In this document: in pieces, positions 14,735 to 43,808 of the stretch
How the letters are laid out: each line of letters opens with the position of its first letter
Numbering within the stretch: the stretch's first letter is position 1
From: Bigelowiella natans CCMP2755
Lineage: Eukaryota > Protista > Cercozoa
Length of the DNA stretch: 47,272 nucleotides
Direction: 5' to 3'
Assembly: GCA_000320545.1 (NCBI GenBank)
Contig: ADNK01001136.1
Span: 1-47,272, forward strand
Made by a program: the position numbers and the translations under genes
Notes under the pieces: model-generated
What the model was told of the DNA's origin: nothing
What the model saw: the letters and a program-made list of their open reading frames with translations, nothing else
Database searches by the model: none

Positions 14735-14779
14735 ATTATGAGACTGATGTAATGATGAACTTAAATTTTATCAATGGTC
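14735..14779 (+). repeat. Dispersed ~45-bp element X, copy 1
   Basis: ATTATGAGACTGATGTAATGATGAACTTAAATTTTATCAATGGTC; matches the copies at 27346, 34450 (reverse) and 43713. Confidence 0.75.
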
Positions 14780-15264
14780 CTCCGCGTTTTAATAAATTAC
14801 ATTGCTGTCAATGTAACTATTCACGCGATCTATGGTCGCCTGCGTTTCACAATGCAATGCGCGAAATAATCCAATTCAAATTTAACTTCCTTAATTATGC
14901 GATAAGCGACATGCTATGAAACCGATTCAGAAGCTATAAGAATAAAACAGGTTGCGAGGCTAGGCACAACCCCATACCGCGTATTACGACAAAGCTCACA
15001 TTACAGACGTATTCAGATACAACGTGCAAAGCTCGTCAGCTGCGGTTGTTTCGCTCGATATGTACTTATTAAGTTTCTATATCTCTATAATACATATCTA
15101 GATACGTGCGTGTTGCGCTCACTGCGACCACGTAGTGTCTATAATATACGCCGAACGTCATCGATATGCGATGATACCAATGGTTGCATGTATGGCGGCC
15201 AGAGAGAACGGTGTACAAAAACTGGCTTTGCACGGTAGTTATCACTACACTCATTTCTCGAGCA

Positions 15265-15581
15265 TCATCCCCCACTCCCCTTATTGGAATCGTCATTATT
15301 TTGGTTGGGCTGGGGAGAGATGGGAGGGGGCATGGTCGACTTGAAAAGCTCTTCGAATCGCCTATTAAACACCCAACGCGCCACCCCCTCGTTGCGGAAA
15401 TCTAGCATTGCGTGTCGAGCAGTCACGCGAAACTTCTTGTCCGTGAGCGCCGTCGGAATAGGGAGCTGATACATGTTACCGTTTGGTAGCTCAAGGATCA
15501 AAGGCGACCTGTCGGTTGTATGGTTTTGTTTGTTAGAAGAAACTGCTCCCCCCCCTGCCCTCCTCTCCCCCGACATCATCC

Positions 15582-15625
<44 letters not shown>

Positions 15626-16650
15626 TTATATTTATATAGCTTACCCTGCTTGGTGGCTATCAGGGACTGTGATATCAAACTCTTGCTCGATTGGCAGGTG
15701 CGCCCCGATCTTCGATCCGGCATTCCACACCCACGCGACGCTGCCGTCAGGGTTGATGGTCCTGTCAGCGCCGCTGATGCTCTCCGGGAAGGGCGCGAGG
15801 GCGGGGAGGATGATGCGGAGAAGGTCGCCCGCCTTGCTGCCGACAGGGAAATCTGTCCGTAGCTCCCGTTTGGCCACTCGCACGATGAAGGAGGATGGGA
15901 TCGTGTCATTGCCGCCCCCCCCCCCCGCCTCCCTCGACGGGATTCTCACCTCGTAGCGCGTGGCGGGGAGGTAGATGACCCCGAGCTTGCGCGGGAAGGA
16001 GACGGCGCGGTGCGACGAGGACATGCCGCTTGACGACGGCGGCGCCGAGAACGAGGAAGCGCCTGCGCTTCGGTAGTTCGGCCGAGATGCGTCCGGGATG
16101 ATGGGGAAGGACGGGCGCGAGAAGCGCGAGCGCTCGCCGCACATGTTACACGCCTGCACGGAGATCTGGTAGGATTTCCAAGGGCTCAGGCCCTTGAGGG
16201 TCACGGGAGAGTACCGCCCCGTCGCCGCCCTCCTCCCCGGCAGCGCCACCACGGTGTAATTCACGGCGCCGCAGGTGGGGTCGTTCTCCTGCTCGAAGAA
16301 GACCTTGATGTGCTTGAGCCCTTTGAGGAGGAATTTGATCAGCGGCGTCCGCGGGCTGGCGAGGGGCACCACGCTGAAGGGGTAGGTGCTGAAGGCGCTC
16401 TCCCCTTTGGCGTTGACCGCTTGGATGTTGAGGTTGTAAGCTAGGCCGTTTTTCAAGCCGGAGATTACCGCCGGGCTCGTCTCGACGTTCTTCAGCTCCA
16501 CGGGCGGGTGCACCGAGGAGTAGGCTACCTTGGCAACCACGTTGTACCTGTGTTGTTGTTGTTGCTGTTTTTGTTGTTGTTGTTGGTGGTGGTGTTGGTG
16601 GTGGTGGTGGTGTGCGGATGGATTGGAGATGTGATTTATGTAAAACAAGT

Positions 16651-16687
<37 letters not shown>

Positions 16688-16723
16688 GAGAAAGAAAGAG
16701 AGAGAAAGAGAGAGATTTATTTC

Positions 16724-16777
<54 letters not shown>

Positions 16778-17319
16778 GCACACGCACATTCATCAACTAC
16801 AAGCGCAAAAAAGAATGCGAAACCAACTTCCCTCCCCCCCCCCCTTCCTATTCTCTCGCCAACTCCTACTTGCACTTGAGATTGCCCCCGAGCCGATTTG
16901 GCGTGAAGAACACGGAGACCTTGCCATTCGCAGGCTGCAGGTGCGTGATAGTGGGAGGATTCGGAACCGAGACGCGGTATATCCTCCTTATGCACATATT
17001 GAGCGTATCGGTGACATAGAGATCCCCATCCCTTCCAAAGCCGATGGAGCATGGGTTTCGGAACAACGCGAGTGTTGCGCTTCCGTCCCGATAACCCCCC
17101 CCGCCGCCCAGCCGCGGATACTCGTAGCTCGTCTTCGCTTGCCATATGTGCGATTTCTGCTGTTGGCGGCTCTCCCCCCCCTCCCTTATCTGCTTTGCGT
17201 GGAAGTAGCTTCCGCGTTGTTGCTGGTTGGTATTACTGCTAATACTGCCGCTGCCGCTGTTAGCAGCAATCCCGCCATCCCCCCCCCCCCCGCCTCGATT
17301 TCGTCCTTCATTCTCATCT

Positions 17320-17350
<31 letters not shown>

Positions 17351-17606
17351 CAGCGGCGCTATCGAGAAAGTAGCCCGCCACTGTCGTTACTTCGCCAGAG
17401 GAAGAAACCATGCGGATGGCGTGGTTGAACGTATCCGTGATGTACAGAGTGCCGTCGATATCGGCGGTGAGGCCGTGCGGCTGGTTGAATCTGGCAATGC
17501 TTCCGATCCCATCGGTGTGTCCTTCGTGTACGTGCAGCAAGTAGATTTTCACGAATAAACGGCATGATGTAATATCGTGGCGGAGGATTTAAAATCTCTA
17601 GTAATA

Positions 17607-17648
<42 letters not shown>

Positions 17649-18898
17649 CGCGCGCGTGTGCTGTGCGTGCCAATGCATTCACCCGAAAAGACACGTGCAG
17701 CCAGAGCATGCAGCTAACCTGCAGTGGAGCTTCCGGCCAAACACACCAGCTTCCCGGTCCTTGCATCCACGCGCCATATTTGATTCTCATAACTTCGATC
17801 TTCTCCTTCACCGAGCAATGCCTCCCCACTGCTGTTGGTGGGGCGCGTTTCCGAGGAAGGCTGATGAGCAGTAGCCAACAGTTGGCTGGAGGGCTGCTTT
17901 GTGCGGGACTCGTTGTCGTTGTCATCGTCGTTGTTGTTATTGTTATCGTTGCAGCGTCTTTCTCTTTGATTTTGCCGCTGCCCCCCCCCCCAGGAAGAGG
18001 CGGCGCAGACGAAGAAGATGTTCCCGAGGGCGTCCTGGGCAAGGCCTCGGACGTAAGGGACGCCAAGTAAGACAGTGTCTACAAATCCGGTCGGTCTTGG
18101 TGACGATGGTGATGCGGATGATGATGCTGAGGAGCTTCTGGCACCGATCTCTTCGGTTCCAGATCTTGCCTCCTTTGCCTCTGATATAAGCGGCATCATC
18201 GTCGACGTTGTCGTAGTCGTTGTCCTCGCCCGTTTTCGATTGCTCTCCTCCATCGCTGCCCCCCTCCCCGTCTCCCCCCCCCCCTCCTCCTCCTCCTCCT
18301 CCTCCTCCTCCCCCCCTTCCTTCCCCTTCTCTGTTTTTGCTGCTGCAGCGGCTGCTGGTGTTGTCGTCATCGTCGTTGCTGTGCCCAGATCGCTGCGAAG
18401 AAGCGGGATGTGAATACGGCGTATTGCATCGTTTCCGTTGTCGGCCACAAGGAACGAGGCCCACCATGTAGGCGCTGATGATGATGATGATGATGATGAT
18501 GAAGAAGAAGATGATGGTGATCCATTTGATTGCGTATCAGCGGATTTGCCGTGCAGTACTTGCATGCTCTTGGCGGCTACGTCATTATTTAAACGGTCCT
18601 CTCCACTATTACTGCAGGGTTGGTGTGTGCGGGGCTGGGTCAGGGAAGGCCTCGAGGTGACGATTCCTTGCGAGAGACTTGATGGTAATCGGAAGCGCTG
18701 ATTGGGGCGCAGACAATAAATGAATGATAGTTTTGATATGGTATGCATCTACCGATGTATGAGTGTGTAACGCGAGGAAAGGTGATGCGACGCCTGGCTT
18801 CTATTCTAGTGTATATTCGTGTCTGCTACGGTTCATTCGCCATGTGTGCGTGGAGGAGGTGAGGGTTGAAGACACACACACGCACACACACACACACA

Positions 18899-18983
<85 letters not shown>

Positions 18984-19223
18984 AAAATATTTGAGGTACT
19001 GCTGTCTACTACCGCGGAGGAGAGTGGTCCATCTTCGAGCCCCCCAATACGGTGGGCTGTGCTTAAGAATGGCTCGCTCGCATTGACTTGGAAAACGCCC
19101 GCAAATGGAACCACGACGCCTTGACGACAACGAATAATGAGGCGGAATTTAAGATCAAAACACGCGCGCACACACACACACACACACATACACACGCACA
19201 CACATACACAATTACGCATTTAA

Positions 19224-19266
<43 letters not shown>

Positions 19267-20130
19267 CGACGTCGCTGCCCGATCAGATTCCTCTCCTCCT
19301 CCTTCTCCTCCCTTAGTAACAATAATACTGCTAGTATACTGCTACTCTACTACTGCTGCTACTACTATTACTACTACAAACTGCTACTTGCTGCACCGTT
19401 GGGCATAATCCTCCTTATCACATGGTTCATCGTATCCGAAAAGAACACGCCTTCGTTCCCTCCCAGCTGCTGGCCAAGCTGATCCATTTCGCCTTTGTGA
19501 TGATCCTCGACGGCTCCTCTGCCATCTTCCACAGCCATTTCACCTTCTTCCCCATCCATTTCATATGTTGGCCTCCCGTGCGGTGGCCTTGGAATATTTT
19601 CCGCCGCTGTAGAACCCCATCCCCCCCCCCCACCCAATGGCAGCACCGTGACACCGTATGGGTAGAACATTCGCGCGAGAAGGCCTTCGCCGTCGCAGTG
19701 GCCTGATGTTGTTTTTATTTGACTGATGCTATCATCATTGCTACTTTCACTAGTATGATTATTGCTACCATCATATTTATCATCATCATCATCATCATCA
19801 TTATAATTTCTATTATTATTATTCTTCGACAGCATCGTTAATATCATTCAGCGACACCGTGCTTTGCTCCCCCTCCCCCCCAAGATTTACAGTAGGTGTG
19901 TGTGATGATGAGTAGTATTATTAGAATGAGCAAAAATATTAACCCCCGTCTTTCCCTCCCCTGCCCCCCCTTTCTCTTTTCTTCACTTTCACCTGCAATA
20001 TGCAAATCAGTGGTGCGAGTCGGCCCTGCTACAGTGGCCACTCTTCTGGTATTACTGGTTGCGCTGCTGCTGCCTCCTTTGGAACATTGGATCCTACGGA
20101 TACGATGATGTCCTAGATGGGGGGGGGGGG

Positions 20131-20175
<45 letters not shown>

Positions 20176-21090
20176 TAACTTGGGTGCGAACGAAAGCTAT
20201 ATTTTCAAGTCAACAACCACGTGGGTTTCATTCAAGGCGTGTGCCGTCTGCGAGCTGATGAAGCAACCTACACAGAGGCACTGCTCTTCGCTCGAAACGC
20301 TACAACTAGCCCCAAACGTGCTTACCAGTATCGGCGACATAAACAGCCTCGTTGCTGGGATCTACCGCGACTCCGTGCGGGTGATGAAAGGTCACCTTCC
20401 TGCTCACTCGCTGGGAAGACAGATCGCCGTTATGATACCCTCTTTCACCGTCAGCAAAAACGCTGTCATCACCACCGTCATCATCGTCAATATCGGTATC
20501 GTCATCGACCACTTCCTCCCCCCCCTCGCCGTCCGCCGCAGCTGCTGCCAGGTTCTCTCTTCTTCCGCTGTGGCGCATCGCATAGTCTCCGGCAAATGCG
20601 ACCGACACTTCTTCCCCCCCTCCCCCAACGTCTCGCTTGTCGCCATAGCCTGCAATCCCTCGCCCTTCCCTGGCCACTGAGCTGTTGCGTCTGTATGTGC
20701 TGAAGGGCCCCGCATGAGTCGAGACCTGCAAGCAATCACCGAAGAGCTTTGGGAACGGTTTTGTCCGGTCTGCTGGATGGCGAGGGGGGGGGGTGAAGGA
20801 AGGGTGATAGGCGTTTTCGTGAAGATTGTTAATCTCAGTAATTCCTTGTGGGGCTGAAGCGATGTGCTGTTGCCATCCGCCCCTCTGCGAGCTCAGCACC
20901 TGAGAATTGAGGGGGATCTTGATTAGATACCTTTCCTTCGCGCACAACCACCCCCTCCTCCTCCCAGCCGGTTGGCAGTGAGAACAAAATCAAATTTGAG
21001 CATTACCAGGGTTACGCACGCGATAAGGGCTGTCGCCAAATTGGCGAGCCGCCCCCGCCGTCTTTGGTGGCTATGCGGAAGCAGACGCAT
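15265..21090 (-). CDS. NHL-repeat (beta-propeller) + fibronectin type III protein with an N-terminal hydrophobic anchor
   Basis: NHL blades: FHHPHGVAVDPSNEAVYVADTG, MFYPYGVTV...VFFSDTMNHVIRRI, FNQPHGLTADIDGTLYITDTFNHAIR, FRNPCSIGFGRDGDLYVTDTLNMCIRRI. FN3 motifs: VISGLKNGLAYNLNIQAVNAKGES and VTLKGLSPWKSYQISVQACNMCGE (exon 16547-15645). The last exon ends at stop 15265. Probable start MRLLPHSHQRRRGRLANLATALIACVTLVML at 21090. Confidence 0.85.
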
Positions 21091-21949
21091 GCCGGCGGGG
21101 GGCGCTGGCGTGCATCCAGGGCTGACGATTGGCTCTCTGAAGTTGGGACATAATTCGTACTGAAAACATCTAAAGGGGTGCATGCATTCTCTTCATTTGA
21201 ATAGGAACTATTCCATAGTTGAAATATCTGAATTAGATTCATACTTTCTGTACGGGGAATCGACTGATAATAATTATGCTAGAAGGGATAGATCTGAATA
21301 TTCTTGGGAATAATTTCCCAGACATTTTTAGCCCAGAAATGAAAGTTCCATCTCTAATTTTTGCCCAAGTGCGTTTTCCGTGTAAAATAATATGGCTTTT
21401 AATAAAGACAAACGGCAAAAGAATTACGATGTCGCATGTATAATATTGATGCTAAGATTACTTTTTTGAAATTGAAAAAAAATAAGCAGTACTGAAAATT
21501 ACTTTGAAAAATCGACTACCCTCTCCTCCGGCTTGTATGCCTTTCTCACCCCTCCACAGCTCCGGGCTAGGAGTCGTCAGGGCTCAACAGTAAGAACCAA
21601 CTTTACGGTAATGCTTGCACCTGTCATACAGCTATCATTCTCGCGAGCACATGTGATTTCAAAGACCGTTCTCGAATTGAGCTTACTCACGTGCATGGTG
21701 CGATGTTGAAGTGATGAAGTCATCTGCATGCTATCGACGCTTATCCTACCACATTCTCCCATGGAGATCAAAATACAGCCTGTCTTCGAAGACATGTCCT
21801 TCTCCCCCTCCCCCCCTTCGACAGCAAGCACGGGGGTTCGATCCCAGCCGTTGGGGCACGTCGGTTGATGCGGCTATGTGTTATTTCTCAGACTGCTGTT
21901 GTGTACATCCTATTAGGGTGTCATCCTTCGCGACCAAACGCAGCAAATC

Positions 21950-22361
21950 ATGTCACGCGATATCATCTCGAAACGACGCTACCTGATGCCTCTTTCAGCC
22001 ATAGCTGCCTGTTTTATTCTCCTGGCTCTGCCACTCACAACAAAGGTATGAGACCCCCCCCTCCCCCCCCTTGGCTCGCTCGCAGGCTATCATCTTGAAA
22101 TTTATTATCCTCTCCGCCAGGGGCGATATAGCAGCGGTATTGGCACGGGGATAACGGGTACGTCAGCTCGCAGCTGCTCCAGTCGCCACCAGGGAACATG
22201 CTTGCGCAATGATTGGTTGTTTGGGGATAGATACTGCTCTCCGACAGGTCAATCATCCACTCAAAACCACCCCCTACCACCACCACCACACTGCAACAAC
22301 GACGAACAGTAATAACGTCGCTGAATGGACACAAGTGACGCACTGCGTTGTTGGTTATTTG

Positions 22362-22396
<35 letters not shown>

Positions 22397-25696: not shown

Positions 25697-27015
25697 ATTT
25701 CGCTCTTTATCATCAAATCGTAGGTTTTGTGCTGCCAAATAACCCTTACGACTTCATCAACTTACGCGTGAAGCTTCCTTCATCATCATCGCCTTCCTCC
25801 TCCTCCTCCTCCCCTCCTCGCCCTTTCAAATCTTGTGAGGTAGTTCAAAAACACACGCAAGCAAGCGACAGCAGAGAACCCCCCCCCCCCCCCCACCCCC
25901 CTCCTACGCAAAAAAAGAAATTCGGTTTTCGGGCAAGTAACACAACATCGCATCGAAGACTATTGATCTCGATGTCCATCATATTCATTGTTATTTCAGG
26001 TGAACGCTGCTGGCAATGTGCCTTTGAGATTCCTAGCTCAAGCAGCGGTCGATAAATATTACACAAATGAATATATGTGTATGTGTGTAAAGAGAGCGTG
26101 TTTTTCCCAGTGTTGCTTTTGTACCGTAAGTTGCGAGGCATATTAACGAGCTCGGATGTCTAGTTCTACTGCGGGGCGTCGTAGCACACCGACCTTTAAA
26201 TTCGCGATTGACAGGCTCTGTTTGTTTACTTTTGGAAAGGCCATACGCTACCCCTCTCTAGATCTTGTTTCCGGTGTTCGAGAGGCGGCCATGTGGGTGC
26301 AGAGAATCCTACAAGGCAAGTGCATTCGAAGACTATTATACAGCGATGATGATGATGGTGGTGATGATGATGATGATGATGATGGTGATGATGTTGATGA
26401 TGATATGATGATAAATCTTACGCGCGATCATGATAGCTGCATGTATGCATAACACAGTGAGCGCATCGTTGTGATGATATAGTTAATTTGTGTGGTTTTT
26501 GCCTTTGCTATCTGCACCCCCCCCCCCCCCCCCCCTTCACTGCAAACCAGATCGCCTTGATTCGTCTCCAACGACCCTCGAGGAAGACATGGAGCTGATG
26601 GGGTCATTAGGCAAAGGTGACGGCAAAGAGTCTCCTGCAGCAGCATCTGTTTTGCAGCTGAAAGTCAATCACAAGCTGCTTCTGGAGAATGCGGTGAGTC
26701 TGCTGCGTGACAAGCGCGCATGCAGATGCACATAGTACATCTAGACACATGACGAAGAACCTATTTCTAATTAGAGCCGAAGAATGTTTGAGAATAGTCA
26801 TCAGAGGTGATCAATTGTCATTGCAACGTGTTGTGTTGGAAATTTCAAATCAGATGGCGCATCTTTCATCTTTGGCTCGGGCGCCGATCTCAGAGGATGA
26901 GGTAAATGAAGCATACATCAAGGGAGAGCTCTCCGACCCTCCATCCCTAGCAGACTACGGCTTGCCCATCGACGACATAGAGATGATCTTGGCTTCTTCA
27001 TCCGACGAAAAATAG
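21950..27015 (+). CDS. SET-domain protein-lysine methyltransferase of the Rubisco-LSMT/SETD3 class, with a signal-like leader
   Basis: Exons give LARWVLDRGG, GRGIVATRDLKSG, YGPYASILP, SLAKVWSRSY, MVPLADLVNHA...KDVKEGEELLITYG, QYFLFYGFVLPNNPYD and a C-terminal PTTLEED segment. First exon MSRDIISKRRYLMPLSAIAACFILLALPLTTK at 21950; stop at 27015. Confidence 0.88.
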
Positions 27016-27345
27016 CCCGCGCTCAGTCCAGCACGCGCATGTGATTTAAGTTTTACATGTTGCCCTTAGTAATAAACGATAATGAGCAGAAAGCTGTTTG
27101 GTAGGTTGTCATTGAAGGCTCACATTATGCAATGCATCGCACTGGCATGGCGGCGCCCATGCTAGCATGCCAAATCGGCACACTCTAGCTACGTGAAAAT
27201 TGCCGCTGGCAAAACTATGTATATATTTAGATGTATCTTGTCCGCCATTCGTAATCATTACTCGAATAGTCGATATTCAATCAAATACTATAGCGATCGA
27301 GCTATTTTCGGACGCATGTGTATTAGGTTGACTGAACGGCTTATA

Positions 27346-27390
27346 TATATGAGACGGATGTAATGAAAGATTTAAATTTTTTCAATGGTC
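27346..27390 (+). repeat. Dispersed ~45-bp element X, copy 2
   Basis: TATATGAGACGGATGTAATGAAAGATTTAAATTTTTTCAATGGTC. Confidence 0.78.
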
Positions 27391-27601
27391 ATCCTGATAT
27401 ATATATATATATATATATATAGAAAATACGATAGTGAATGCACATACACACACAAATGTGCGAGCATACATCATTACCGCAATGTAGCCGCTGCCAAATA
27501 GCTAACCATGGCTACATCAGAATAACAACTATTGAGCAAGTATTTAATCATTTCATTACATTAATAACATCTTGTGTTACTTCGCACATCATCATCTCAT
27601 T

Positions 27602-29590
27602 TCAGCCAACATTAGTCTGGCAACGGTCTCGCGGCCCAGGCAAGTCAGGAAGGTCCCATGTTCCTGCTATCACAGACTGCTGCACCGTGCTTAGCCTTCT
27701 CTCAACGAATAAATCTCTTAATTCGCCTCGCCGCTTCTCGGGCTTTTTGGTGTAGACATCCTGTTTCTTAACCCTGCAGAAGAGGTCTTTCAGCTCGGAG
27801 TCTTTGACATCGGGCTCATCCGCTGTGTCTCGCGCCGATCGTGCGAGTCTAGATTCACAAACATCAGCGCATCAGGTATTCTTCCCTCAAAGCACCGTTG
27901 CAAACGAAATGGCGCGCGAATGGGTTTTTGTTTTTTTAATGTGTCATCGTCGAAAGCTCCCCGGCATTTATACTTTCCCATTTCAAGACGACTTTCTCTG
28001 TGTTCTCTACTCTGCACAACACCGCCTACCCCTCTTGCGCGGCGTCTTTGATCAAGCCCACTGTCATCAGGGCGTCCACGTATCTATTGTTGTTGGTTAA
28101 AACCGACATTAGTGACAACAGCGGCGACGACTAGCAAAACGGTGAATTGAGCCTTACGAAGTGCCAAACACTTCCACGGGATCTTCAAATACTGCCGGAG
28201 GCTGCTCCGCGGCCATTTTCGCCTTTCCATCCGGCTTCCGGTCCGCGCCTTCTTGCTTCACGGTGTCGCAGGCTGCTGAGGTTCGGAGCATCTTCTCGTT
28301 CAGCCTGGCGTCTTTGGCCACGCGGGCGCGGACGCGCGTGCGAATCCAATGGACGAATTCATGGCGTGTGATTGCCCCGCTGCCGCTGCAATGAGTGTGT
28401 CATGTGGAACAAAAGCGTGTGAGTGAAAGTGTCTGCTGCCGGCACGGTCAAAGGCCGGGTTAGTAGTTAACGCCCCCTGATCCTCTGCCCTCCCTACTTC
28501 CAGAAATACGTCACATGTGCATGTACGAGACATGTGCATCCTCATCACCGCACTCGTCTCGGTCGGCTCTGGCAAGAATATCTCCCCTACATATATATGC
28601 GCCGGCATCGGCATCAGCACGACCTGACATTGACGTAGGCGAATGCTTTGTCTAAAATGTGCGCCAAGCGCTCCTCTGGTGACGTGTACGAACGCGACGA
28701 CGGGGCTTTGAATGGGGATGGGGACCCCCGGCGTGAAGATGAGGGCGAGGAGGCCGCCAAATTGTCGAAAAGATTCAAGCATTCAGCCTGTGTTTGTTCA
28801 ATCATCATTCACAAATTGATTACGATGCGATTCGAAAGAATGGTGGTCTTCTTCTTTTGGTTGATTCTCTCCTGTCCTTTCTCGCATTAGCGAGACGATC
28901 GATGATTGGCTGTGGAAGGAAAATAGCGAATGCGAGCGACTGTGGCACTAACACACACACACACGCACACGCATAAACACATACACATACACACATAATG
29001 TACATGTTTTGCGTTATCCGTATTGTGCGTGGGTGCGTGCGTGTGTGTGTTTGTTTGCGTGTGTATATATGTGTACGTATTCATCTTGTGTTTCAACAGG
29101 CACGACAAACAACATACACCCCATTCGGAGCAAAGAAGCTCAAAACTACCAAACGGACGAATTCAGTGGCCTCTAGGCTCCCCGAGCAATCCACATCAAA
29201 CTCGTCAAATTTAAGCGCGGCCCACATCTCAAAGCGATCTACCCGCCCCTCCCCATCGCTGTCGATGTTCTCGAATTGATCCCGGATGCTCTTCAGAAGG
29301 CCGCCTATACGAGCACGTGATGGTGGGCAGGTTGGAAGGGGCAGAGGAGGGCGAGGTCCGTTTTGGTAAAGAATGATTGATTTATTTTCTTTTAATTTAA
29401 AAAAAAAAATGCTTCTTCGCTGATATATGGCGACAACAGAGCAAAACGTATCAGCCGTGTAACGACGTGCCAGATACCGAGATGGACACCTTTTAGATTA
29501 ACTCACACGCCTTAGGGGCTTTTACCCCGAATATCGTTGCAATCCCCAGTTGTCAGATCATTGTCCTCCTTCTCCTCCTCCTCCTCCTCG

Positions 29591-33824: not shown

Positions 33825-34063
33825 GTGTTTCAAAGGAACTCAACAGATTCATGGCAGCGCACAACAGGGCGGTTATAATCATCGGGCGCCTTGGGAGGCA
33901 GGATGTTCTCAAGATATTCGCCAAAACAGACCGCATCATGAATTTGAAGATTGCCTATGAACAAGGGAATAAGTGGCATTTCCCCGACGCGAACAAATTT
34001 GCGTTTAATGACGTCTGGAAGCCTCAGTTCTTTCCGAGCGACTACTCAGGCACAAAGATCTAA
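32450..34063 (+). CDS. Unknown protein (446 aa) with an N-terminal myristoylation/palmitoylation-type motif MGCGAS and a charged coiled-coil segment
   Basis: Three exons, 32450-32951, 33029-33628 and 33825-34063, join in frame (1341 nt including stop) through GT-AG introns. No family recognised. Confidence 0.75.
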
Positions 34064-34449
34064 GTAGGTCCCGGAGCGAAGGGAAGTTCCTTTACGATGG
34101 TACATGATATTCGAAGAGAAGACAGATCATGAATAGTAAAGCTAGGACAGTCTGCAATAGAGCGTGTATCCACACCTGCATGTAGTAGTCGACACAGTGA
34201 GGGAAATTAACACCGAAATGTCCGAATCGCACGACATTCATTTCTGAATGGACTAGCCTGCCTCAAGTATGCATATGCATCTCCGGATGTAGCGTAAGAA
34301 CAGCCATACCCAAGGCGAAAATGAGTACAACAAAAACAATAGAAATGACTTTGTGGTTATGGTAATGATATTAATGAGAATATTAGTAATGCTAATATTA
34401 TAGGCCTTAAACGTACTTGCGATGCAACATTGCTGACACAATGAGCCAT

Positions 34450-34495
34450 GACCATTGAATAAATTTGATTTGATTGATTACATTCGTCTAACAAT
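34450..34495 (-). repeat. Dispersed ~45-bp element X, copy 3 (inverted, more diverged)
   Basis: The reverse strand reads ATTGTTAGACGAATGTAATCAATCAAATCAAATTTATTCAATGGTC. Confidence 0.6.
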
Positions 34496-34930
34496 GCGCC
34501 ATGCACACCATGCAATAAATAAGTGATGACTAAAATCTATTTACGAAGGCGTATGTGCATGGCTGGCCTTCTTATACTATTAGACAGAGGCGTAAAGAAT
34601 TCTATGTAATGTAGCGTAATACATGTCTAGGCTTCATGCAAATACGAGCCCATTATTACGCATTTGTTTCGATTCCATTATCATAATCCACCCTTGTAGA
34701 ATATATGACTTTGCCCTCTAGATGCATGGTAAACAGTTGGCGAGAAGCTATGCTGCTGTTGCCTCGAGTCATCATTTTTTATTTATTAGATATCAATGAC
34801 GCTCCTGTCACTGCTGTGATGAAATTGGTTAAATTCATTCCGAAACCGGATGCATTTCCATACCAAAAAACGAGTCCGCTGAGCTGCAACGAGACAGAAA
34901 ATCTTGTTCTTATCTTGTGCTGATCTTTAT

Positions 34931-36489: not shown

Positions 36490-39400
36490 ATGGCTCCTCA
36501 GAACGACGAAAAATCCGTTGAATGGCCACTGGATTCAAACACTGGGAGCCCTTTGCCGCCATTTGATCTTCCTGTATCGAATCACGGGATGTTTTCGTCT
36601 GTGGCGGTAGTACACTACGGGGGAGGAGGAGGGGAAAATAGCGGGATTAGAACATCTGAGAATATCGACGAAGGAGAGCAATACACCTTCCTCCTCAAGC
36701 ATTTTGATCTTCCTGTATCGGAACACGGGGTGTTTCTGTCAGTGGCGGTAGTACACTAAAGAAGGAGGAGGCGGGGGGGGAGGAGGGGAATATAGCGGGA
36801 TTAGAACATCTGAGAATATCGACGAAGGAGAGCAATACACCTTCCTCCTCAAGCATTTTGAGCTCCATTTTTTTTCATCATCAGGGTGGGCACGGCGGTC
36901 GCTCAGGGAAGGCAGAAGCTCGTCACAGCAGAGCTTTCCGCACATCGAATGGAGGCAACGCTGTCTTTACATTCATCGACCAGAGCAACGACAAAGAGCC
37001 ATCTTCTTCAAGTTCCAATCCGATCACTAGGGATAAATCGGGAGAATCTTCCTCCAGCACTCAAGATCAAATCGAATGGACGAAATATAAGGCAGATATC
37101 GACCGTATAAATCGCACAATCTGTGCAACGAGGGTTGACAAAAGTAGGCAAAAAATACGTAGACCAGTGCAACTATTCAGAAACGGACAGTTTAACTCTA
37201 ACATTAAGAAACACTTGAAAACGGCTTACAAAATTCTTGAAGGGAAGACCGGCTTTGATCGTTTTATTGAGAACGAGATAGAACGTATTCGAAAAATAGC
37301 AAACGAGTTAAAAATGCGTGAGCAAGAAGAAACAAAAGAATTCGTTCCACCTCCAATGGAAAGAAACAAAACCATTGAAGATGGGAACAGGGTTACTCTT
37401 GATTTCACGGCATCTCTTTCAAAGGAATTAGTTTCTGAGATAGAACGAAAATACACCAAATCCGAATCCAATAAACAAATAGCTGAGAAAAAGTTCAGTA
37501 CAGCAATACATACCAAGCTAATGAGAGAAAGCTCCAATATGGATGACTTTTTGTTAATCTGCGGACCTCTTCAGGAGATGGATGAATCCAAAGGCCGAAA
37601 ATGGCATTTCACACTAATGTTCGAAAAGCCTTACTACAATGACAATAACGATACTGATCATAAAACTATAGGCAATCTTGAAGATTTTACCAAAGAAGCA
37701 TTCAAAACAATTTTGGATATAGATATTGGACGCATTGTAAATAAAGCTGGCAGCATCATATTGCAGATTCCAGTTAAAGGCCATGATATACTCACCTTCG
37801 TGAAAAAACGGCTCGCCTTCCGAAAATTCTTCATCGAGAAAAGCCACGGTACAAGCATTATCTATTATGAGTTTTGCATCAACAAATCAGATGAGTTAAT
37901 ATGATTTTGTCGCGAAGTTATCAACAACTATTCCCCATGACTCCTCTCTATGAATACACAATCTGCCTTGCGATCTACGAAAGAAAAAAAGTTCGTTTTT
38001 TCTCCAATTATAATGTAATCTTCTGATAAATTCGGTAAACCAGGCGACGATGATATGGTACCTACAATGAGCTTGGTAAGGCAAGAAACCATTTCGATAG
38101 AATCGTTTCCAAAGAAATACAGATTCAAGGTGATTTGTCGATCCCGAGAGGCTGCGGATTTCATCATCAACAACATGAAGAAGGACCTGGGGATATGGAG
38201 ACATTTCACGATTCAGGTTAAAGAATGGTCTAAATTTATGCAGTTTTTACGCTAAGAGTAATATTTTGAAATTAGGATGTGCTTTGTAACAACAAGAAGA
38301 TCAGAATCGATGGAAGCACACCCCTCCACCATGCTGCTAAAAATAATCATATTGATGCGGCGCGGTACCTTGTGGAGAAGACCAACGCCAACATCGAGGC
38401 TGAGGATAACGCTGGACGCACGCCCCTCCATTGTGCTGCTGAAAATAATCATGTTGATGTGATGCGGTATCTTGTGCAGAAGGCCAAAGCCAGCGTCGAA
38501 GCTGAGGATGAATATGGATTCACGCCCCTCCATTATGCTACTGAAAACAATCATATTGAGGCGGTGCGGTACCTTGTGGGGACGGCAAAGGCCGACATCG
38601 AAGCTGAGGACAACATTAGATACAAACCCCTCCACCTTGCTGCTGAAAATGGTTATATTGATGTGATGCGGTATCTTGTGCAGAAGGCCAAAGCCAGCGT
38701 CGAAGCTGAGGATGAATATGGATACACGCCCCTCCATCACGCTGCTGAAAACAATCATCTTGAGGCGGTGCGGTATCTTGTGGGGACGGCAAAGGCCAAC
38801 ATCGAAGCTGAGGACAACGATGAAAACACACCCCTCCACCGTGCTGCTAAAGAGAATCGTATAGATGTGATGCGGTACCTTGTGGAGAGGGCAAACGCTA
38901 ACATCGAGGCTGAGAACAAGAATGGATACACGCCCCTCTACCGTGCTGCTAAATGTAATCATGTTGATGTGATGCGGTATCTTGTGGAGAAGGCAAACGC
39001 CAACGTCGAGGCTAAGGATAACGAGAGATGCACGCCGCTTCACTGTGCTGCTGAAAATAATCATGTTGATGCGGTTCGGTACCTTGTGGAGAGGGCCAAC
39101 GCCAACACCGAAACTGAGGATAAATACAGATGGACACCTCTCCACTTCGCTGCTGCTAGAAATAATAACATTGATGCGGTGCAGTACCTTGTGGAGAAGG
39201 CCGCCAACATCGAGGCTAAGGATTACCATGGATACACACCCCTCCACCGTGCTGCTGAAATTGGTCATATTGATGTGGTGCGGTACCTCGTGGAAAAGGC
39301 CGCCAACATCGAGGCTGAGGATAACGATGGATGCACACCCCTCCACCATGCTGCTATTAATGGTTATGTAAATGCGGTGCGGTATCTTGTGGAGAAGGCC

Positions 39401-40351
39401 AAAGCCAACATCGAGGCTGAGGAACACGATGGATGCACGCCGCTCCACCGCACTGCTATTAATGGTGATGTTGATGCGGTGCGGTACCTTGTGGAGAGCA
39501 ACGCCAACGTCGAGGCTAAGGATTACCATGGATGCACACCCCTTCATCGTGCTGCAATAAATGATCACATTGATGCGGTTCGATACCTTGTGGAGGAGGC
39601 CAACGCCAACGTTGAAGCCGAGGATGTCAAAGCATACACACCCCTCCACTATGCTGCCGAAGATAACCACATGGATGTGGTGCGGTACCTTGTGGAGACG
39701 GCAAACGCCAACATCGAGGCTGAGGATAACGATGGATGCACGCCGCTCCACTGTGCTACTGAAACCAATCAAATTGATGCGATGGGGTACCTTGTGGAGA
39801 GGGCCAACGCCAACGTCAAGGCCAAGAACAAGAATAGGTGCACACCTCTACACTGCGCTGTTAAAGAAAATCATATCGATGCGGTGCGGTATCTTGTGCA
39901 GAAGGCCAAAGCCAGCGTCGAAGCTGAGGGTGAATATGGATTTACGCCCCTCCATTACGCTGCTGAAAATAATTATGTTCAGGCGGTGCGGTACCTTGTG
40001 GGTACGGCAAAGGCCGACATCGAAGCTGAGGACAACGATAAAGACACACCCCTCCACCATGCTGCTAGAAATAATCATATTGATGTGATGCGGTACCTTG
40101 TGGAGAGGGCCAACGCCAACATCGAGGCCAAGAACAAGAATGGGTGCGCACCCCTACACTGTGCTGCTAAAAAAAATCATACCGATGCGGTGCGGTACCT
40201 TGTGGAGAAGGCCAAAGCCAACATTGAGGCCAAGAATAATACTGGAAGAACACCACTTAATGTTGCCTTTGGACAGGAGACCAAAATGCTTTTGCAAGAG
40301 GTGACTCTTATCATTGTCTTCTTTCTATCGATTGGAGTGTCTTATTGCTGA
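36490..40351 (+). CDS. Ankyrin-repeat protein with a long uncharacterised N-terminal region; may continue into the caspase-like gene
   Basis: ATG at 36490 (MAPQNDEK...FSSVA) can splice in phase to the 36858-37904 ORF. The acceptor at 38275 opens a ~2-kb exon with 19 full ANK repeats (e.g. GRTPLHCAAENNHVDVMRYLVQKAKASVEAEDEY) plus a capping repeat. Linking exons at 37895-38275 are ambiguous. Confidence 0.75.
36560..36853. repeat. Tandem duplication, units of 140 and 154 bp
   Basis: 36560-36699 and 36700-36853 share GATCTTCCTGTATCG...GTGGCGGTAGTACACTA...ATAGCGGGATTAGAACATCTGAGAATATCGACGAAGGAGAGCAATACACCTTCCTCCTCAAG. Confidence 0.92.
38312..40290 (+). repeat. Coding tandem array of ankyrin repeats (99-102 bp units)
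   Basis: 20 TPL-type motifs in one exon. The near-identical DNA block GCGGTATCTTGTGCAGAAGGCCAAAGCCAGCGTCGAAGCTGAGG occurs at 38464, 38668 and 39886. Confidence 0.95.
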
Positions 40352-40733
40352 TTATAACAACGCAACAGGCCATTCGCGCACGGGAAAACATGCTTGAAGA
40401 GGGTGAAAAGAAATCAACAGCTGAAAATGTGAGCAAGGGAGAGGATGAAAGAGGAGCATAAAGAGAATTATAATCAGATTTTATGTTGATATGGAAGCTT
40501 ATCAGTAGTTCGCTCTCCTCTGAAGTGGCTAGACGGTCTACTGATCATGCTCTTTGTCCCTTTCTTCTTTATAGATGTCGATGCTACTTCCCACTCTAAA
40601 GCTACCAGTGACTCTTCGTTCAAGCATTCATTCAAGCAGAGCCTACGCTCGGATCCAAAAGAGCGAGGAGATCTTATACGAGTTAGTCGTTACTTACAAC
40701 ACAAAAGAGAAGAGGAAGAGGGAGGGAGAAGGG

Positions 40734-40764
<31 letters not shown>

Positions 40765-41477
40765 TGTGAAGCCTCTATACTATGTTTTTCAATAAACATC
40801 ATGCAACGATTTTATCCATTTTATTCCATTACAATTCAATTTTGCTAGAGGTGAAGCGAGGCCTTCGAAAACGGAAGCTCTTCCAATTGGAGGTATTTTG
40901 CACACGTGATATTTGTGCCGTAGTTCCATTTCGCAGAACTTAAGAGTATGTATTCACACATAGAGCAACCGACTGATTACATATTTTGCGTCAGAGAAAT
41001 TGAAACGAGAAGACCTTCTAAGGCTACCAGTCACTGTCCTTGTTGACGCAATAATGGAACGGTTCTCTCCGAAATTACATTTTACATATTGATAGGATTG
41101 ATATGGTTGAATGAAGCAAGCCTTTATGTGACCTATTTTTGCAACACGATCAGAGCATGAATGAGTAGAAGTCAACCATATTTTTGTTTTCCCCAATATA
41201 ATTGAAAATTAATCTTATACACGTAATATCTGTTTTTGCTGTTCACCACCAAATTTTACGGCCTTAAAAGTGAAGAACAGATCGAACAGATCGATGAATT
41301 TCAACTGAAATTGGGCGTGGCTCTTGGGAAATTAAAAAAGTTTCATCAAAAGCTACAAAAGAAAATGCCTGTTGAGTTTGCACAAGTTGCACAGTCTATG
41401 ATGACTTCGGTATCCGATCTAACCATTTTTTCAATTATGACAAAACTACACGAGTCTTGCATATGTGAAATGCTGCT

Positions 41478-43390
41478 ATGGTATTTTTCGTGAGAATTAT
41501 TATCTTCATAAGATGTCCATGGTCGCAGATAAAGAATGAAGAACATTCACCTTCATATTCGAATCCGTTGAAGAAGCGCAATCGCTCTGAGCTAAACACA
41601 TTTTCCGGGTCTCCATATTCATGGCTGTTTCCGACGGGCCAAAAACGGCAGCGTAGGGTGCGTTGTTCAGAAAAACACAGTATACGCATAGGACATCATT
41701 GCGATGTGATATGTTCTCAGGTGGGAGGGGAACACATCGTTATGATCAAGGAATTGAATCCGGACGATTATAAAGACGTTCGAAACAACAACACGTACCT
41801 TTGGATAAACGGGGAACATCGCATGAAGGACATCGTTCGAGTCTTCAAGCCTATCAAGAGCGAGCTTGCTGCACAATACGACTACGATAGGACAGTGGAG
41901 TTGCATGGAGAGGCTGATGAGAAGCTGAAAGTAAAGTTTGCACGGTCTGATAATGGAACCGTGAGGATACAGCAAAAACCTAAGGAACCCGCCACCATTA
42001 ATCTCAGCGGAACGATCTTCCTCAAAAGCAACTTCCCCATTGAGAAGCTAGAGCTATTAGATAAGGACATGAAGCCCATCAAGAACAAAGTGTATCAACG
42101 TTTGCTGCATCATGAGCCACTGAGGCAGCAGCATCAGCATCTCGATGTCGCTAAATACAAACGATCTTCGCAACTTACCAAAAAGCCTAGATTATCGTCT
42201 AAATCACCGTCGAATACTATCCCCGCATCGATACGTAAAACGGAGGGACATTCTCTTGGAATTGTTGATAACTCACCAATGGAAACGGAAACAACGTCTC
42301 AGGAGAGTGGGAAAATTGAGAAACACTTTCCGAAAAAGCCACACCGTAAAGGGTTCGAAAAGGCAATCAAGGAAATGAAAAAGATCGCAGTAGTGAGACC
42401 TAGCAAAAAGCCGGAGCCTGTTATTACCCACAAGTTTGCATTGATAATCGGTAATGGAAACTACAGCATGTGCTCGTTGGGATCAAACCCTGTTAACGAT
42501 GCACAAGCCATGAGGAATGAATTTGAATCTGAGTACGGTTACACGGTCTTCTATCATGAAAACCTGACAAGTCAGGGTATGAAGAAAGCTCTTTACGAAT
42601 TTGGAGAAGCCCTCTGCCAACATAAAGGCAATTCTCTAGCAGTTGTATTTTTCGCCGGCCATGGTATCCAAACAGCAATTGGGGACGAGGTCGATGATTT
42701 TCTACTGGGTATTGATTGCAACTTTGCGCATGAAAGGTAGAGAGGTTACTGCCTTCTCGATTATCATTTAAATAACTCCATTTTCCTGTTTTAGGGAACT
42801 GATAAGGAAAGAACTATGTGTTAAAGCTATAGTTGACGAATTGGATGCAGCAGAAGTCTCGATGGCGATTCTGGTGCTAGATTGTAATCGTGATTCTTCA
42901 GGTATTTGGATACATAAATCATCAACCATCTCTCAAACAACACAGTTATGATCTACTATTATGTTAGGATTACCAGGCTCAAAGGTAAGTAAGAATCGTT
43001 CATTGACGAGAAGTGGTTTGGAGATTCCAAAGGAAGAGTTACAAAGATGCATGATATTCTACGCTTGCCAACCAGGTAAATTTATCTTTGGTAACACAAA
43101 AGATTCTTGGGCCGAAGGATGGTTAAATGGTGTGTGTCACATATGTGTCAGGCGAGGTAGCTGGAAATGGAGAGAACCAACATGGACTGTTCACCGAATC
43201 ATTGATGTTAGCCCTTAGAAGCCAGAGGAAAAATTGTAGGCATTCTCCAAGATTCATCGATCTCTTAAATGACGCTGCAAAATTGATGAAAGATCGAGAA
43301 CAGATACCTGCTTTTGAAATAATGCCGCTACCTGGCACAAGCACTGACATTTGCATTGATGGAACCCTCTACAAAGACTGGTACAAATGA
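41478..43390 (+). CDS. Caspase-like (peptidase C14, ortho/paracaspase-like) domain protein; 5' end unresolved
   Basis: KFALIIGNGNY...NPVNDAQAM...GYTV...NLT...M..AL..F...AVVFFAGHG (His 42660-42662). In-frame exons 42795-42901 (AILVLDCNR), 42968-43075 (RSLTRSGL...MIFYACQPG) and 43152-43390 (GNGENQHGLFTESL...EQIP) complete p20- and p10-like parts. Confidence 0.85.
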
Positions 43391-43712
43391 GAGCTGAGAA
43401 GTCACAAGCACGCTGACACAGTGGAACGATGTAGAGAAGTAATTGCCTTCCACATGCACACATTTGTGATCATCATGTGGCAACCAACATGCGCTCCTTC
43501 ATGCCAACCAGCGACAAACACCATGCACGATGTTGTCACGTAGCAGACTGCTTGTCCATGTGCAATTGCCACATGAACGCTACACGCACTGCGTGGCATC
43601 GACGACAGGACATGGATGCTTCAAAAATGCATACTTCACGCGATGGCAGAGACAAATAAACACAACATGAGCTTTGTAACCATAACCGCTGCTTCGTACT
43701 GGTACATTAGAA

Positions 43713-43808
43713 TGACCATTGAAAGATTATGAGACGGATGTAATGAGATGTTTAAATTTTTTCAATGGTATAACTATGACCATTGAAAGATTATAGACAC
43801 ATGTAATA
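43713..43808 (+). repeat. Dispersed element X, copy 4, with inverted ends and an adjacent partial tandem copy
   Basis: TGACCATTGAAAGATTATGAGACGGATGTAATGAGATGTTTAAATTTTTTCAATGGTA (43713-43770), then TGACCATTGAAAGATTATAGACACATGTAAT from ~43777. Confidence 0.8.

What the first reader, a model, noticed from the sequence alone, without database searches (positions are those of the whole stretch)
14735..43808. A ~45-bp element sits in every one of the four tail-to-tail (convergent) spacers
Seen: consensus TTATGAGACGGATGTAATGA-N4-5-TTAAATTTTTTCAATGGTC at 14735, 27346, 34450 (inverted) and 43713. These are the TrmB/NHL, SET/K-channel, MGCGAS/Zn2Cys6 and caspase/TM-gene spacers. Each copy lies ~290-390 bp after the plus-strand stop (14443, 27015, 34063, 43390). 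I found no full copy in genes or other spacer types. Inference: either a bidirectional 3'-end/termination, boundary or origin element, or a tiny mobile element that targets or is only tolerated in convergent spacers. I do not recognise it as any named family.
Basis: partly seen in the sequence, partly recalled or inferred. Interest (0 to 1): 0.8.

Follow-up and report, generated by a model that had tools for sequence, protein, structure and literature searches.

The report
Short repeat marking convergent gene junctions
A conserved 45-base DNA motif, the core of a longer repeat that often sits as two copies facing each other, occurs only in the gaps between tail-to-tail genes in this stretch of the alga Bigelowiella natans; it is either a small selfish repeat or a transcription-stop/boundary signal, and the data here cannot yet decide which.

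Summary
Three near-identical cores lie at 14736, 27347 and 43727 (+), and one weaker core at 34450-34494 (-). Each half-site pattern matches 4-5 times against 0.03-0.04 expected by chance. No profile hit falls outside the four 3' spacers.

New findings:
- The window is Bigelowiella natans nuclear DNA.
- The 45 bp is the core of a directional unit of about 82 bp or more: block 1, a variable 4-5 nt, block 2, a linker, and a GTAGC-G-GCTAC palindrome.
- Decayed copies in the opposite orientation sit in the same spacers (27526-27574, 44062-44115), giving facing pairs, plus truncated fragments.
- One further copy lies on a metagenome contig.
- The two 20-bp blocks are almost invariant, while the 5 nt between them and the rest of the unit are free to change.

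Best reading (about 0.5): a small non-coding dispersed repeat, like a MITE, foldback element or REP, confined to promoter-free convergent spacers. Its core would be a protein recognition site.

Main rival (about 0.3): a host polar termination or boundary element.

It matches no Rfam family or tRNA, has no coding capacity, and I found no mention in the literature. The decisive tests need the whole genome, other strains and 3'-end or nascent-RNA mapping. Another first-stage note (s1-417393) reports the same motif in convergent spacers elsewhere in this genome; I did not check it.

The parts
14735..14781 (+). Core copy c1 (block 1, 5-nt gap, block 2) in the spacer between the TrmB-like gene and the NHL/FN3 gene. 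It lies 292 bp after stop 14441-14443.
   Evidence: (E 3.9e-13). The stop is placed by homology. No recognisable linker or palindrome follows.
27346..27392 (+). Core copy c2, 332 bp after the plus-strand stop (27013-27015). A (TA)n run follows directly at 27393-27422.
   Evidence: E 2.4e-13; 59 bp, 88% to the L001 unit.
27479..27517 (.). Box 2 and hairpin (GCAATGTAGCC ... GGCTACAT). It is shared as the 3' end of both the + unit (c2) and the facing - unit (U6).
   Evidence: (exact 14-mer match).
27526..27574 (-). Decayed inverted core U6. It starts about 30 bp after the stop of the minus-strand ORF 27605-27871.
   Evidence: E 0.069; 20-nt arms, 85% complementary to c2.
34448..34495 (-). Core copy c3, the weaker one. 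Two of its three consensus TpA sites are changed to TpG or CpA. It lies 385 bp from the plus-strand stop and 436 bp from the minus-strand stop.
   Evidence: (E 3e-11).
34363..34400 (+). Possible very decayed facing partner of c3 (GGTAATGATATTAAT...). Not significant.
   Evidence: (p 0.068 against shuffles).
43683..43724 (-). 5'-truncated unit: the end of block 2, the linker and a weak box 2. It abuts c4 head to head.
   Evidence: 42 bp, 79% to L001 unit positions 52-93, E 7e-6.
43726..43771 (+). Core copy c4, 336 bp after stop 43388-43390 and about 270 bp beyond the end of transcript contig L004 (43453).
   Evidence: (E 4.5e-12).
43776..43809 (.). Partial repeat of the 33 bp at 43712-43744: an inverted block-2 end followed by a degenerate block 1 (TTATAGACACATGTAAT).
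43829..43905 (-). Two further motifs resembling block 1 (ATAGACACAGTAAYAT at 43831-43846 and 43885-43900), within a TA-rich local palindrome.
   Evidence: The pattern itself is not above chance: 16 of 100 shuffles give 2 or more matches.
43970..44115 (-). Full but decayed unit U5, 218 bp from the minus-strand ORF stop. Its parts are the core at 44062-44115, with an 8-9-bp GCTAGC-containing insertion at about 44098-44106; duplicated TCATCCTAAT linker pieces; and box 2 at 43970-43995.
   Evidence: E 2.7e-4; 29-nt arms, 83% complementary to c4.

Best explanation
The 45-bp motif is the conserved core of a family of short, non-coding, directional repeat units in the Bigelowiella natans nuclear genome. 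Each unit is about 82 bp in its most compact copy: block 1 ATTATGAGACGGATGTAATGA, a free 4-5 nt, block 2 TTAAATTTTTTCAATGGTC, a linker, and the palindrome GTAGC-G-GCTAC. Units stand alone or as two units facing each other, so that a locus forms a long imperfect palindrome.

The most likely reading is a small non-autonomous selfish repeat, working like a MITE or foldback element, or like bacterial REP/REPIN doublets. New copies arise by insertion or local duplication. They persist only in the promoter-free DNA between convergent genes, either because insertion is targeted there or because copies elsewhere are removed by selection. They then decay through this genome's TpA>CpA/TpG mutation, CTAG-type insertions and microsatellite growth. 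The two invariant 20-bp blocks would be the recognition site of the protein that mobilises or copies the unit.

Shown: the anatomy, the copy list, the restriction to four 3' spacers in this window, the decay states, and one further copy on an unrelated contig. Inferred: mobility, the recognising protein, and the cause of the spacer restriction.
For: - Family of common descent. Five near-consensus cores are 85-96% identical to one another, on unrelated flanks: four in the window and one on ENA contig L001.
- The similarity extends beyond the core. A linker and a palindromic box 2 are shared by L001, c2/U6 and U5, at variable distances.
- Facing inverted pairs. They occur in spacer 2 (20-nt arms, 85%) and spacer 4 (29-nt arms, 83%). 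These stretches fold as long hairpins, with z -2.2 and -3.0. L001 has a probable decayed partner (p 0.004).
- Debris typical of repeats. There is a 5'-truncated unit at 43683-43724, partial duplications next to c4 and c1, an 8-9-bp CTAG-containing insertion inside U5, and a (TA)n run inside the c2 unit.
- Decay. In c3 two of three TpA sites are changed in the direction of this species' known hypermutation (bioRxiv 10.64898/2026.01.13.699255, read).
- Location. All hits lie in 3,212 bp (6.8%) of the window. P is about 3e-5 to 3e-4 for four independent cores, even if only half the window counts as non-coding.
- No coding capacity. ORFs through the core are 26-64 aa, with a stop four codons upstream. 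There is no Rfam or tRNA match.
Against: - No target-site duplication and no short terminal inverted repeats could be defined at unit ends (read).
- No transposase or other mobilising gene is linked.
- Copy number and insertion polymorphism could not be measured, because the genome is not in the searchable collections.
- Conservation is uneven in a way neutral repeat decay does not predict. The 5 nt between the blocks vary in every copy, while 40 other columns carry only 5 single variants (P about 0.008).
- In c1 and c4 the core is 89-96% intact while the rest of the unit is gone.
- In each pair one arm is near consensus and the other is decayed.
- No copy lies in the many introns of the window, where a small neutral insert might be tolerated.
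Confidence: 0.5

Rival explanations
1. A host cis-element: a polar (orientation-dependent) RNA polymerase II termination, pause or roadblock site, or a boundary site. A sequence-specific protein binds the two 20-bp blocks. The element sits between convergent genes so that read-through from either side is stopped before the polymerases collide. Facing copies serve the two directions.
For: - The architecture is bipartite: two nearly invariant blocks and a free 5-nt gap of fixed length.
- Every one of the four spacers keeps at least one core at 85% identity or more, while neighbouring copies and the rest of the unit decay.
- In both clear pairs the + copy lies nearer the + gene and the - copy nearer the - gene.
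- c4 lies about 270 bp beyond the end of the transcript contig for its gene, where termination is expected.
- The one tandem spacer with an evidence-backed 3' end has no copy. This is the spacer downstream of the M3 peptidase gene at 45.0-45.7 kb. That fits a function specific to convergent junctions.
- An unchecked note (s1-417393) reports the same motif only in convergent 3' spacers of another window.
Against: - Truncated, nested and heavily decayed copies, and a linker-plus-palindrome at variable distance, are not expected of a plain binding site.
- Distances from stop codons range from about 30 to 436 bp.
- The fragment at 43683-43724 breaks the 'sense to the nearer gene' rule.
- The only copy in spacer 3 has lost 2 of 3 TpA sites.
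- The core holds none of the Reb1/TTF-I-type motifs I recall from memory.
- Transcript contig ends are not mapped poly(A) sites.
- No binding or termination data exist.
Confidence: 0.3
2. An RNA-level element. One form is a small hairpin within the core: a 7-bp A/U-rich stem (UGAAAGA/UUUUUCA) closed by GGAUG/CAUCC. It would act in extended 3' UTRs, possibly with the invariant UGUAA serving as a poly(A) signal of the green-algal type. The other form is the facing pairs read through into long hairpin RNA that feeds small-RNA production at convergent genes.
For: - The hand-drawn structure pairs 78% of cells, against 72% in shuffles (5 of 500 shuffles reach it) and 30-64% when slid. Five pairs change on both sides.
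- ATGTAAT is invariant in all seven copies.
- UGUAA is the poly(A) signal in Chlamydomonas and Ostreococcus (PMC11529991).
- U6 starts about 30 nt after a stop codon, so it could lie in a 3' UTR.
- The pairs fold as long hairpins.
Against: - RNAalifold predicts no consensus structure.
- Single-copy folds are no better than shuffles for most copies, with z from -0.7 to -2.4.
- The structure was drawn from these same sequences.
- The transcript contig of the caspase gene stops 270 bp short of c4.
- No ORF-bearing transcript in the protein collection covers c1 (a weak negative).
- A poly(A) signal would be needed at every gene, but the M3 peptidase 3' end has no copy.
Confidence: 0.08
3. A DNA-level chromosome element other than a terminator, for example a sequence-defined replication origin or a cohesin/condensin loading site placed where transcription does not run through it.
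For: - It occurs only in transcription-poor convergent spacers.
- It is a long bipartite conserved motif with an A/T-rich second block.
- From memory only: origins favour convergent intergenic regions in budding yeasts, and Kluyveromyces lactis uses a roughly 50-bp origin consensus.
Against: - Sequence-defined origins are known only in budding yeasts (from memory).
- There would be far too many sites if every convergent junction carries one.
- Decayed and truncated copies argue against it, and no data bear on it directly.
Confidence: 0.05
4. Chance similarity, or an assembly artefact.
For: None beyond the small sample: one 47-kb window.
Against: - Shuffles give 0.03-0.04 matches where 4-5 are seen.
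- An independent assembly (ENA ERZ1742973) carries a 96%-identical copy with different flanks.
Confidence: 0.01

Closest known systems
MITEs and foldback-type non-autonomous DNA elements of eukaryotes
   Same: They are short, non-coding and AT-rich, and occur as dispersed copies with unrelated flanks. Loci form long imperfect inverted repeats that can fold as hairpins. Internal microsatellites, truncated copies and nested copies occur.
   Different: No target-site duplication and no defined short terminal inverted repeat were found. The two arms of a pair are unequally preserved. Single units are common. Only a 45-bp internal core is strongly conserved. Copies are absent from introns in this window.
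Bacterial REP / REPIN / BIME elements (mobilised by RAYT transposases)
   Same: They are very short repeats confined to intergenic DNA at gene 3' ends, often between convergent genes. They frequently occur as inverted doublets. They are tied both to selfish spread and to transcript-end effects.
   Different: Those are bacterial and each unit is itself a palindrome. Here the genome is a eukaryotic nucleus, the core is not a palindrome, and no RAYT-like gene is known to be linked. This is a resemblance in behaviour, not membership.
Helitron/Helentron-derived short elements (HINEs such as DINE-1), recalled from memory
   Same: The unit is directional, with a conserved 5' block, a variable middle that can hold a microsatellite, and a 3' stem-loop close to the end.
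   Different: The unit does not start with TC. A CTRR end followed by T is seen only in the L001 copy (CTAA|T). No Rep/helicase gene is at hand.
Polar protein-roadblock terminators (Reb1/Nsi1/TTF-I sites, the rDNA Sal box), recalled from memory
   Same: They are short sequence-specific DNA sites that act in one orientation, are placed downstream of genes, and are sometimes arranged in both orientations.
   Different: The known motifs are absent from the core. Those sites are 10-20 bp, not 45 bp plus a palindrome. They do not occur as decayed or truncated copies. No binding or termination data exist here.
UGUAA poly(A) signal of green algae (PMC11529991, PMC1868727)
   Same: An invariant TGTAA sits inside block 1, with a T-run and a CA about 20-25 nt downstream.
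   Different: A poly(A) signal is a pentamer in otherwise free sequence and is needed at every gene. Here 45 bp are conserved and at least one gene's 3' end lacks a copy. Its use in the cercozoan host nucleus of B. natans is unknown.

Membership tests
MITE / foldback element | Terminal inverted repeats at the two ends of one element | tested here: inconclusive
   Whole units face each other in spacers 2 and 4 (arms of 20 and 29 nt, 83-85% complementary), and probably in L001 (p 0.004). Single units (c1) have no partner (p 0.52). The unit itself has no short terminal repeats.
MITE / foldback element | Target-site duplication flanking the element | tested here: not met
   The flanks of c1, c2, c4, c3, U5 and L1 share no duplicated bases at the unit or pair boundaries (read). 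The decayed outer ends weaken this test.
MITE / foldback element | Many homogeneous copies genome-wide, and insertion polymorphism | not testable with these tools
   The B. natans genome is not in the searchable DNA collections. One metagenome scan found a single extra copy. The viral and prokaryote collections held none.
MITE / foldback element | No coding capacity | tested here: met
   Only one frame is open through the core. The ORFs are 26-64 aa, with a stop four codons upstream.
REP/REPIN-like repeats | The unit is a short palindrome able to form a stem-loop | tested here: inconclusive
   The core has only a weak 7+5-bp A/U-rich hairpin. The unit ends in the palindrome GTAGC-G-GCTAC.
REP/REPIN-like repeats | Inverted doublets in intergenic DNA at gene 3' ends | tested here: met
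   There are facing pairs in spacers 2 and 4, and all copies lie in 3' spacers.
REP/REPIN-like repeats | An associated RAYT (IS200/IS605-type) transposase in the genome | not testable with these tools
Helitron-derived short element | 5'-TC and 3'-CTRR termini, with insertion between A and T | tested here: not met
   Units start with ATTATGAG. CTAA followed by T occurs only after the L001 palindrome, not in U5 or c2.
Helitron-derived short element | A palindromic hairpin a few bases before the 3' end | tested here: met
   GTAGC-G-GCTAC lies at the 3' end of the unit in L001, and box 2 recurs at 27479-27492 and 43970-43995.
Polar roadblock terminator | A binding motif of a known terminator protein | tested here: not met
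   The consensus contains no Reb1-type TTACCCG or Sal-box-like sequence. Those motifs are recalled from memory.
Polar roadblock terminator | Lies downstream of the poly(A) site, and polymerase stops there | not testable with these tools
   The only hint is that transcript contig L004 ends at 43453, 270 bp before c4. Contig ends are not mapped 3' ends.
Poly(A) signal (UGUAA type) | Present in sense orientation near the 3' end of most genes | tested here: not met
   The element is absent downstream of the M3 peptidase gene (transcripts L002 and L003). No sense-orientation copy follows the NHL gene or the plus-strand gene ending at 34063.
Any Rfam RNA family / tRNA-derived SINE | A match to a curated covariance model or a tRNA-like fold | tested here: not met
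   No hit reaches the gathering score in the window, and no tRNA is found. At E<=1 only far-sub-threshold miRNA-like hits appear, in TA-rich palindromes.

The most novel reading that the evidence does not exclude
B. natans marks its convergent gene junctions with a dedicated 45-bp bipartite DNA site that is read by a sequence-specific protein in an orientation-dependent way. The site may have been spread originally by a mobile element and then kept by selection. It stops or insulates transcription between tail-to-tail genes. If so, this would be a genome-wide, sequence-defined terminator or boundary system in a eukaryotic nucleus.
Probability: 0.25. Interest if true: 0.8.

Novelty: new variant of a known kind. 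Interest (0 to 1): 0.55.

Why it matters
Almost nothing is known about how transcription ends, or how neighbouring genes are insulated, in Rhizaria.

If the core is a host element, it would give a short, testable sequence for transcription termination or boundary function in a transformable chlorarachniophyte. It would also be a rare case of a long sequence-defined site at convergent junctions.

If it is a selfish repeat, it would be a eukaryotic parallel to bacterial REP/REPIN elements: tiny, often paired, and confined to convergent 3' spacers. Its copies would serve as a natural clock for the TpA-directed hypermutation and CTAG-type insertions recently described in, or noted for, this genome.

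Either way, the motif is a useful marker of convergent junctions for annotating this genome.

Tried and rejected
- Known RNA families and tRNA/SINE origin: rejected. Rfam gives nothing at gathering score, ARAGORN finds nothing, and only noise appears at E<=1.
- Coding exon or micro-protein: rejected. One frame is open through the core (YETDVM..LNFFNG), but stops lie four codons upstream and the ORFs are 26-64 aa.
- Spliced-leader or small-RNA gene ending at ..CAATG|GT: rejected. The sequence after GGTC is not conserved and the copies are not in tandem arrays.
- Part of an LTR of the retrotransposon remnant on L001: rejected. The copy lies 2.7 kb from the integrase remnant, and nothing else on L001 matches the window.
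- Origin from viral or prokaryotic sequence: no exact pattern matches in IMG/VR (two scans) or in 185,579 prokaryote genomes.
- TpA-hypermutated hidden copies: a degenerate search that let each TpA read as CpA or TpG found no extra copies.
- More copies through spurious ORFs in transcript or metagenome gene calls: no candidates. The query was specific to c1, so this negative is weak.
- Literature: searches for the motif strings, for B. natans poly(A)/UTR biology and for B. natans MITE/Helitron reports turned up nothing relevant.
- Annotating the left 12 kb by Pfam and a codon-usage score failed, so the count of convergent spacers there stays open.
- Weak hits near 7.67 and 7.84 kb are an 8-mer match and a (CAATGTT)3 run, not copies.

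Full report
**What is there**

Reading the four sites shows the same sequence, about 45 bp long, at 14736-14779, 27347-27390 and 43727-43770 on the plus strand. A more diverged copy lies at 34450-34494 on the minus strand. An alignment with 100-bp flanks shows that similarity stops sharply at both ends of the core. With up to 3 mismatches, the block-1 pattern matches 4 times and the block-2 pattern 5 times. Dinucleotide-preserving shuffles give 0.03 and 0.04. A profile built from the four copies returns them at E 2e-13 to 3e-11. It finds nothing with E<1 outside the same four spacers. Apart from an ankyrin-repeat array and microsatellites, ATGACCATTGA is the most repeated complex 11-mer in the window.

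**Whose DNA it is**

The TrmB-like exons are 100% identical to JGI Bigelowiella natans model 134145. Transcript contigs held in IMG match the caspase gene and the M3 peptidase gene at 100%, and at 98% for another strain. Caspase paralogues are all from Bigelowiella.

These data fix two of the gene ends:
- The TrmB-like gene stops at 14441-14443. The frame is confirmed by the C-terminus of an MMETSP homologue.
- The caspase gene has exons from 41000 to 43390, stop 43388-43390, and a transcript contig that ends at 43453.

Pfam places NHL/FN3 domains on the minus strand at 15.6-21 kb and an EF-hand on the minus strand at 29.1-29.5 kb. The other flanking genes rest on ORFs only. I could not confirm the names SET, K-channel or Zn2Cys6.

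The minus-strand ORF 27605-27871 puts that gene's stop near 27602. The four spacers are then 14444-15264, 27016-27601, 34064-34930 and 43391-44328. They total 3,212 bp, or 6.8% of the window.

**New anatomy**

The same profile picked up two decayed copies in the opposite orientation inside spacers 4 and 2. They lie at 44062-44115 (E 2.7e-4) and 27526-27574 (E 0.07).

One scan of metagenome contigs with a strict pattern found one further copy, on ENA contig OZSS01003905.1 (ERZ1742973 NODE_3905). This contig is held as L001/L005. The copy is 96% identical to c2 and c4 and has unrelated flanks.

That copy is the most compact, and it shows that the element is longer than 45 bp. The core is followed by TCATCCTAATGTAGCTATGCAATGTAGCGGCTACAGCGCT, which ends in the palindrome GTAGC-G-GCTAC. 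Using this unit of about 82 bp as a query, the linker and palindrome turn up in three places:
- downstream of c2, at 27479-27492, beyond a (TA)n run;
- downstream of the inverted copy U5, at 43970-43995;
- within the inverted copy U6.

In spacer 2 the two facing units share the palindromic end. Spacer 4 also holds these pieces:
- a 5'-truncated unit at 43683-43724, abutting c4 head to head;
- a partial repeat at 43776-43809;
- two motifs resembling block 1 within a TA-rich local palindrome.

The facing cores are 83-85% complementary over 20-29 nt. The paired stretches fold as long hairpins, with z -2.2 and -3.0. L001 probably has a very decayed facing partner about 120-200 nt downstream (p 0.004). 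Spacer 3 may have one (p 0.07). Spacer 1 has none (p 0.5).

**Signs of turnover**

- U5 carries an 8-9-bp insertion containing GCTAGC inside block 1.
- c3 has lost two of its three consensus TpA sites, to TpG and CpA. This is the direction of the hypermutation reported for B. natans (bioRxiv 10.64898/2026.01.13.699255).
- c2 has a microsatellite inside the unit.
- c1 and c4 have lost or replaced everything after block 2.

**Signs of constraint**

Among the four best copies, the five columns between the blocks are all variable, with 2-3 states each. The other 40 columns carry five single variants. After correcting for the choice of window, P is about 0.008.

Each spacer keeps one core at 85-96% identity, while its facing partner and the rest of the unit are much more decayed. 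A two-armed element decaying neutrally should not be this lopsided.

**Where it is not**

No copy lies in genes, introns or divergent spacers. None lies downstream of the M3 peptidase gene, whose 3' end faces the next gene's 5' side.

The palindrome-rich, TpA-poor islands at 8.4-9.0 kb and 45.0-45.8 kb have no copy. In spacer 4 such an island (43451-43630) lies between the end of the transcript contig and the repeat cluster. The islands and the core are therefore separate features.

Distances from the co-oriented gene's stop are 292, 332 and 336 bp for the plus copies, and about 30, 218 and 436 bp for the minus copies. There is no fixed spacing.

**What it is not**

- There is no Rfam family, tRNA or SINE signature.
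- It has no coding capacity.
- It does not match viral or prokaryotic collections.
- I found nothing in the literature.
- A small A/U-rich hairpin can be drawn in the core. It shows some compensating changes. However, RNAalifold predicts nothing, and the folds are barely better than shuffles.

**Interpretation**

The extended unit, the facing pairs, the truncated and nested fragments and the range of decay states are what a dispersed repeat of common descent looks like. I take that as the base reading: a small non-autonomous selfish repeat, like a MITE, foldback element or REP, confined to promoter-free convergent spacers. My confidence is about 0.5. Mobility itself is inferred. I found no target-site duplication, no defined termini and no linked transposase.

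The uneven conservation, one good core per spacer, and the gene-proximal orientation of both clear pairs fit a host function. Most plausibly that would be a polar termination or boundary site bound through the two blocks (about 0.3). The two readings are not exclusive: a mobile element could have been retained for such a function. RNA-level roles (about 0.08) and other chromosome functions (about 0.05) are weaker.

An unchecked first-stage note on another window of this genome (s1-417393) reports a GACGGATGTA(ATGA) element only in convergent 3' spacers. If true, it extends the pattern beyond this window. I did not test it.

**Limits**

- This is one 47-kb window plus one 6-kb contig.
- The genome itself is not in the searchable collections.
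- Gene models are partial.
- Transcript contig ends are not mapped poly(A) sites.
- The left 12 kb is not annotated, so 'every convergent spacer' is shown only for the four spacers named.

Noticed in passing
window 13272-14443: JGI Bigna1 model 134145 is 100% identical to the window exons but ends at ..RGATHYE. An MMETSP homologue shows one more C-terminal exon (..ALMQNGSIWERAY.., stop 14441-14443), so the public model looks 3'-truncated.
   Followed up: partly
window about 45680-45697 (minus strand, M3 peptidase 3' UTR); L002 against L003: The 98%-identical strain (L002) reads GAGCTAGAGAG where the window and L003 read GAGCTAGCTAGAGAG. This is a 4-bp CTAG presence/absence difference between strains, in line with the CTAG 'scar' notes on this genome.
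   Followed up: partly
window 43451-43630, 45001-45800, 8401-9000: These are TpA-poor islands (0-1 TpA per 60 bp) rich in CA/TG and in CATG/TGCA/CTAG. The island in spacer 4 starts exactly where transcript contig L004 ends (43453). A 2026 preprint already describes TpA>TpG/CpA hypermutation in B. natans (10.64898/2026.01.13.699255).
   Followed up: partly
whole window, e.g. 1113-1156, 9727-9775, 18940-18981, 11764-11791: The window is dense in (TA)n, (CA)n, (GA)n, (CAT)n and poly-C runs. Yet PMC12730881 states that simple repeats such as (AT)n are largely absent from the published B. natans assembly. The window may come from a newer long-read assembly that recovers them.
   Followed up: no
window 46702-46730 and 46897-46929 (minus strand): Transcript alignment shows micro-exons of 29-33 bp in the M3 peptidase gene.
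   Followed up: no
window 41000-43453: Transcript contig L004 confirms seven exons of the caspase-domain part of the large ankyrin-caspase gene. The introns are 55-205 bp and the stop is at 43388-43390. The contig starts at 41000, so it does not show whether the ankyrin array belongs to the same mRNA.
   Followed up: partly
L001/L005 4360-6162 (minus strand): The contig carries a decayed retrotransposon integrase remnant (weak Integrase_H2C2 match). It comes from a low-coverage (2.9x) ENA metagenome assembly, ERZ1742973, that evidently contains a Bigelowiella-like organism.
   Followed up: partly
window 14773-14790 and 14832-14849; 14797-14817: Next to c1, the end of block 2 plus 10 nt (ATGGTC+CTCCGCGTTT / ATGGTC+GCCTGCGTTT) recurs 59 bp later. 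Between the two lies a perfect 8-bp-arm palindrome, TTACATTG-CTGT-CAATGTAA. I have no explanation for this.
   Followed up: no
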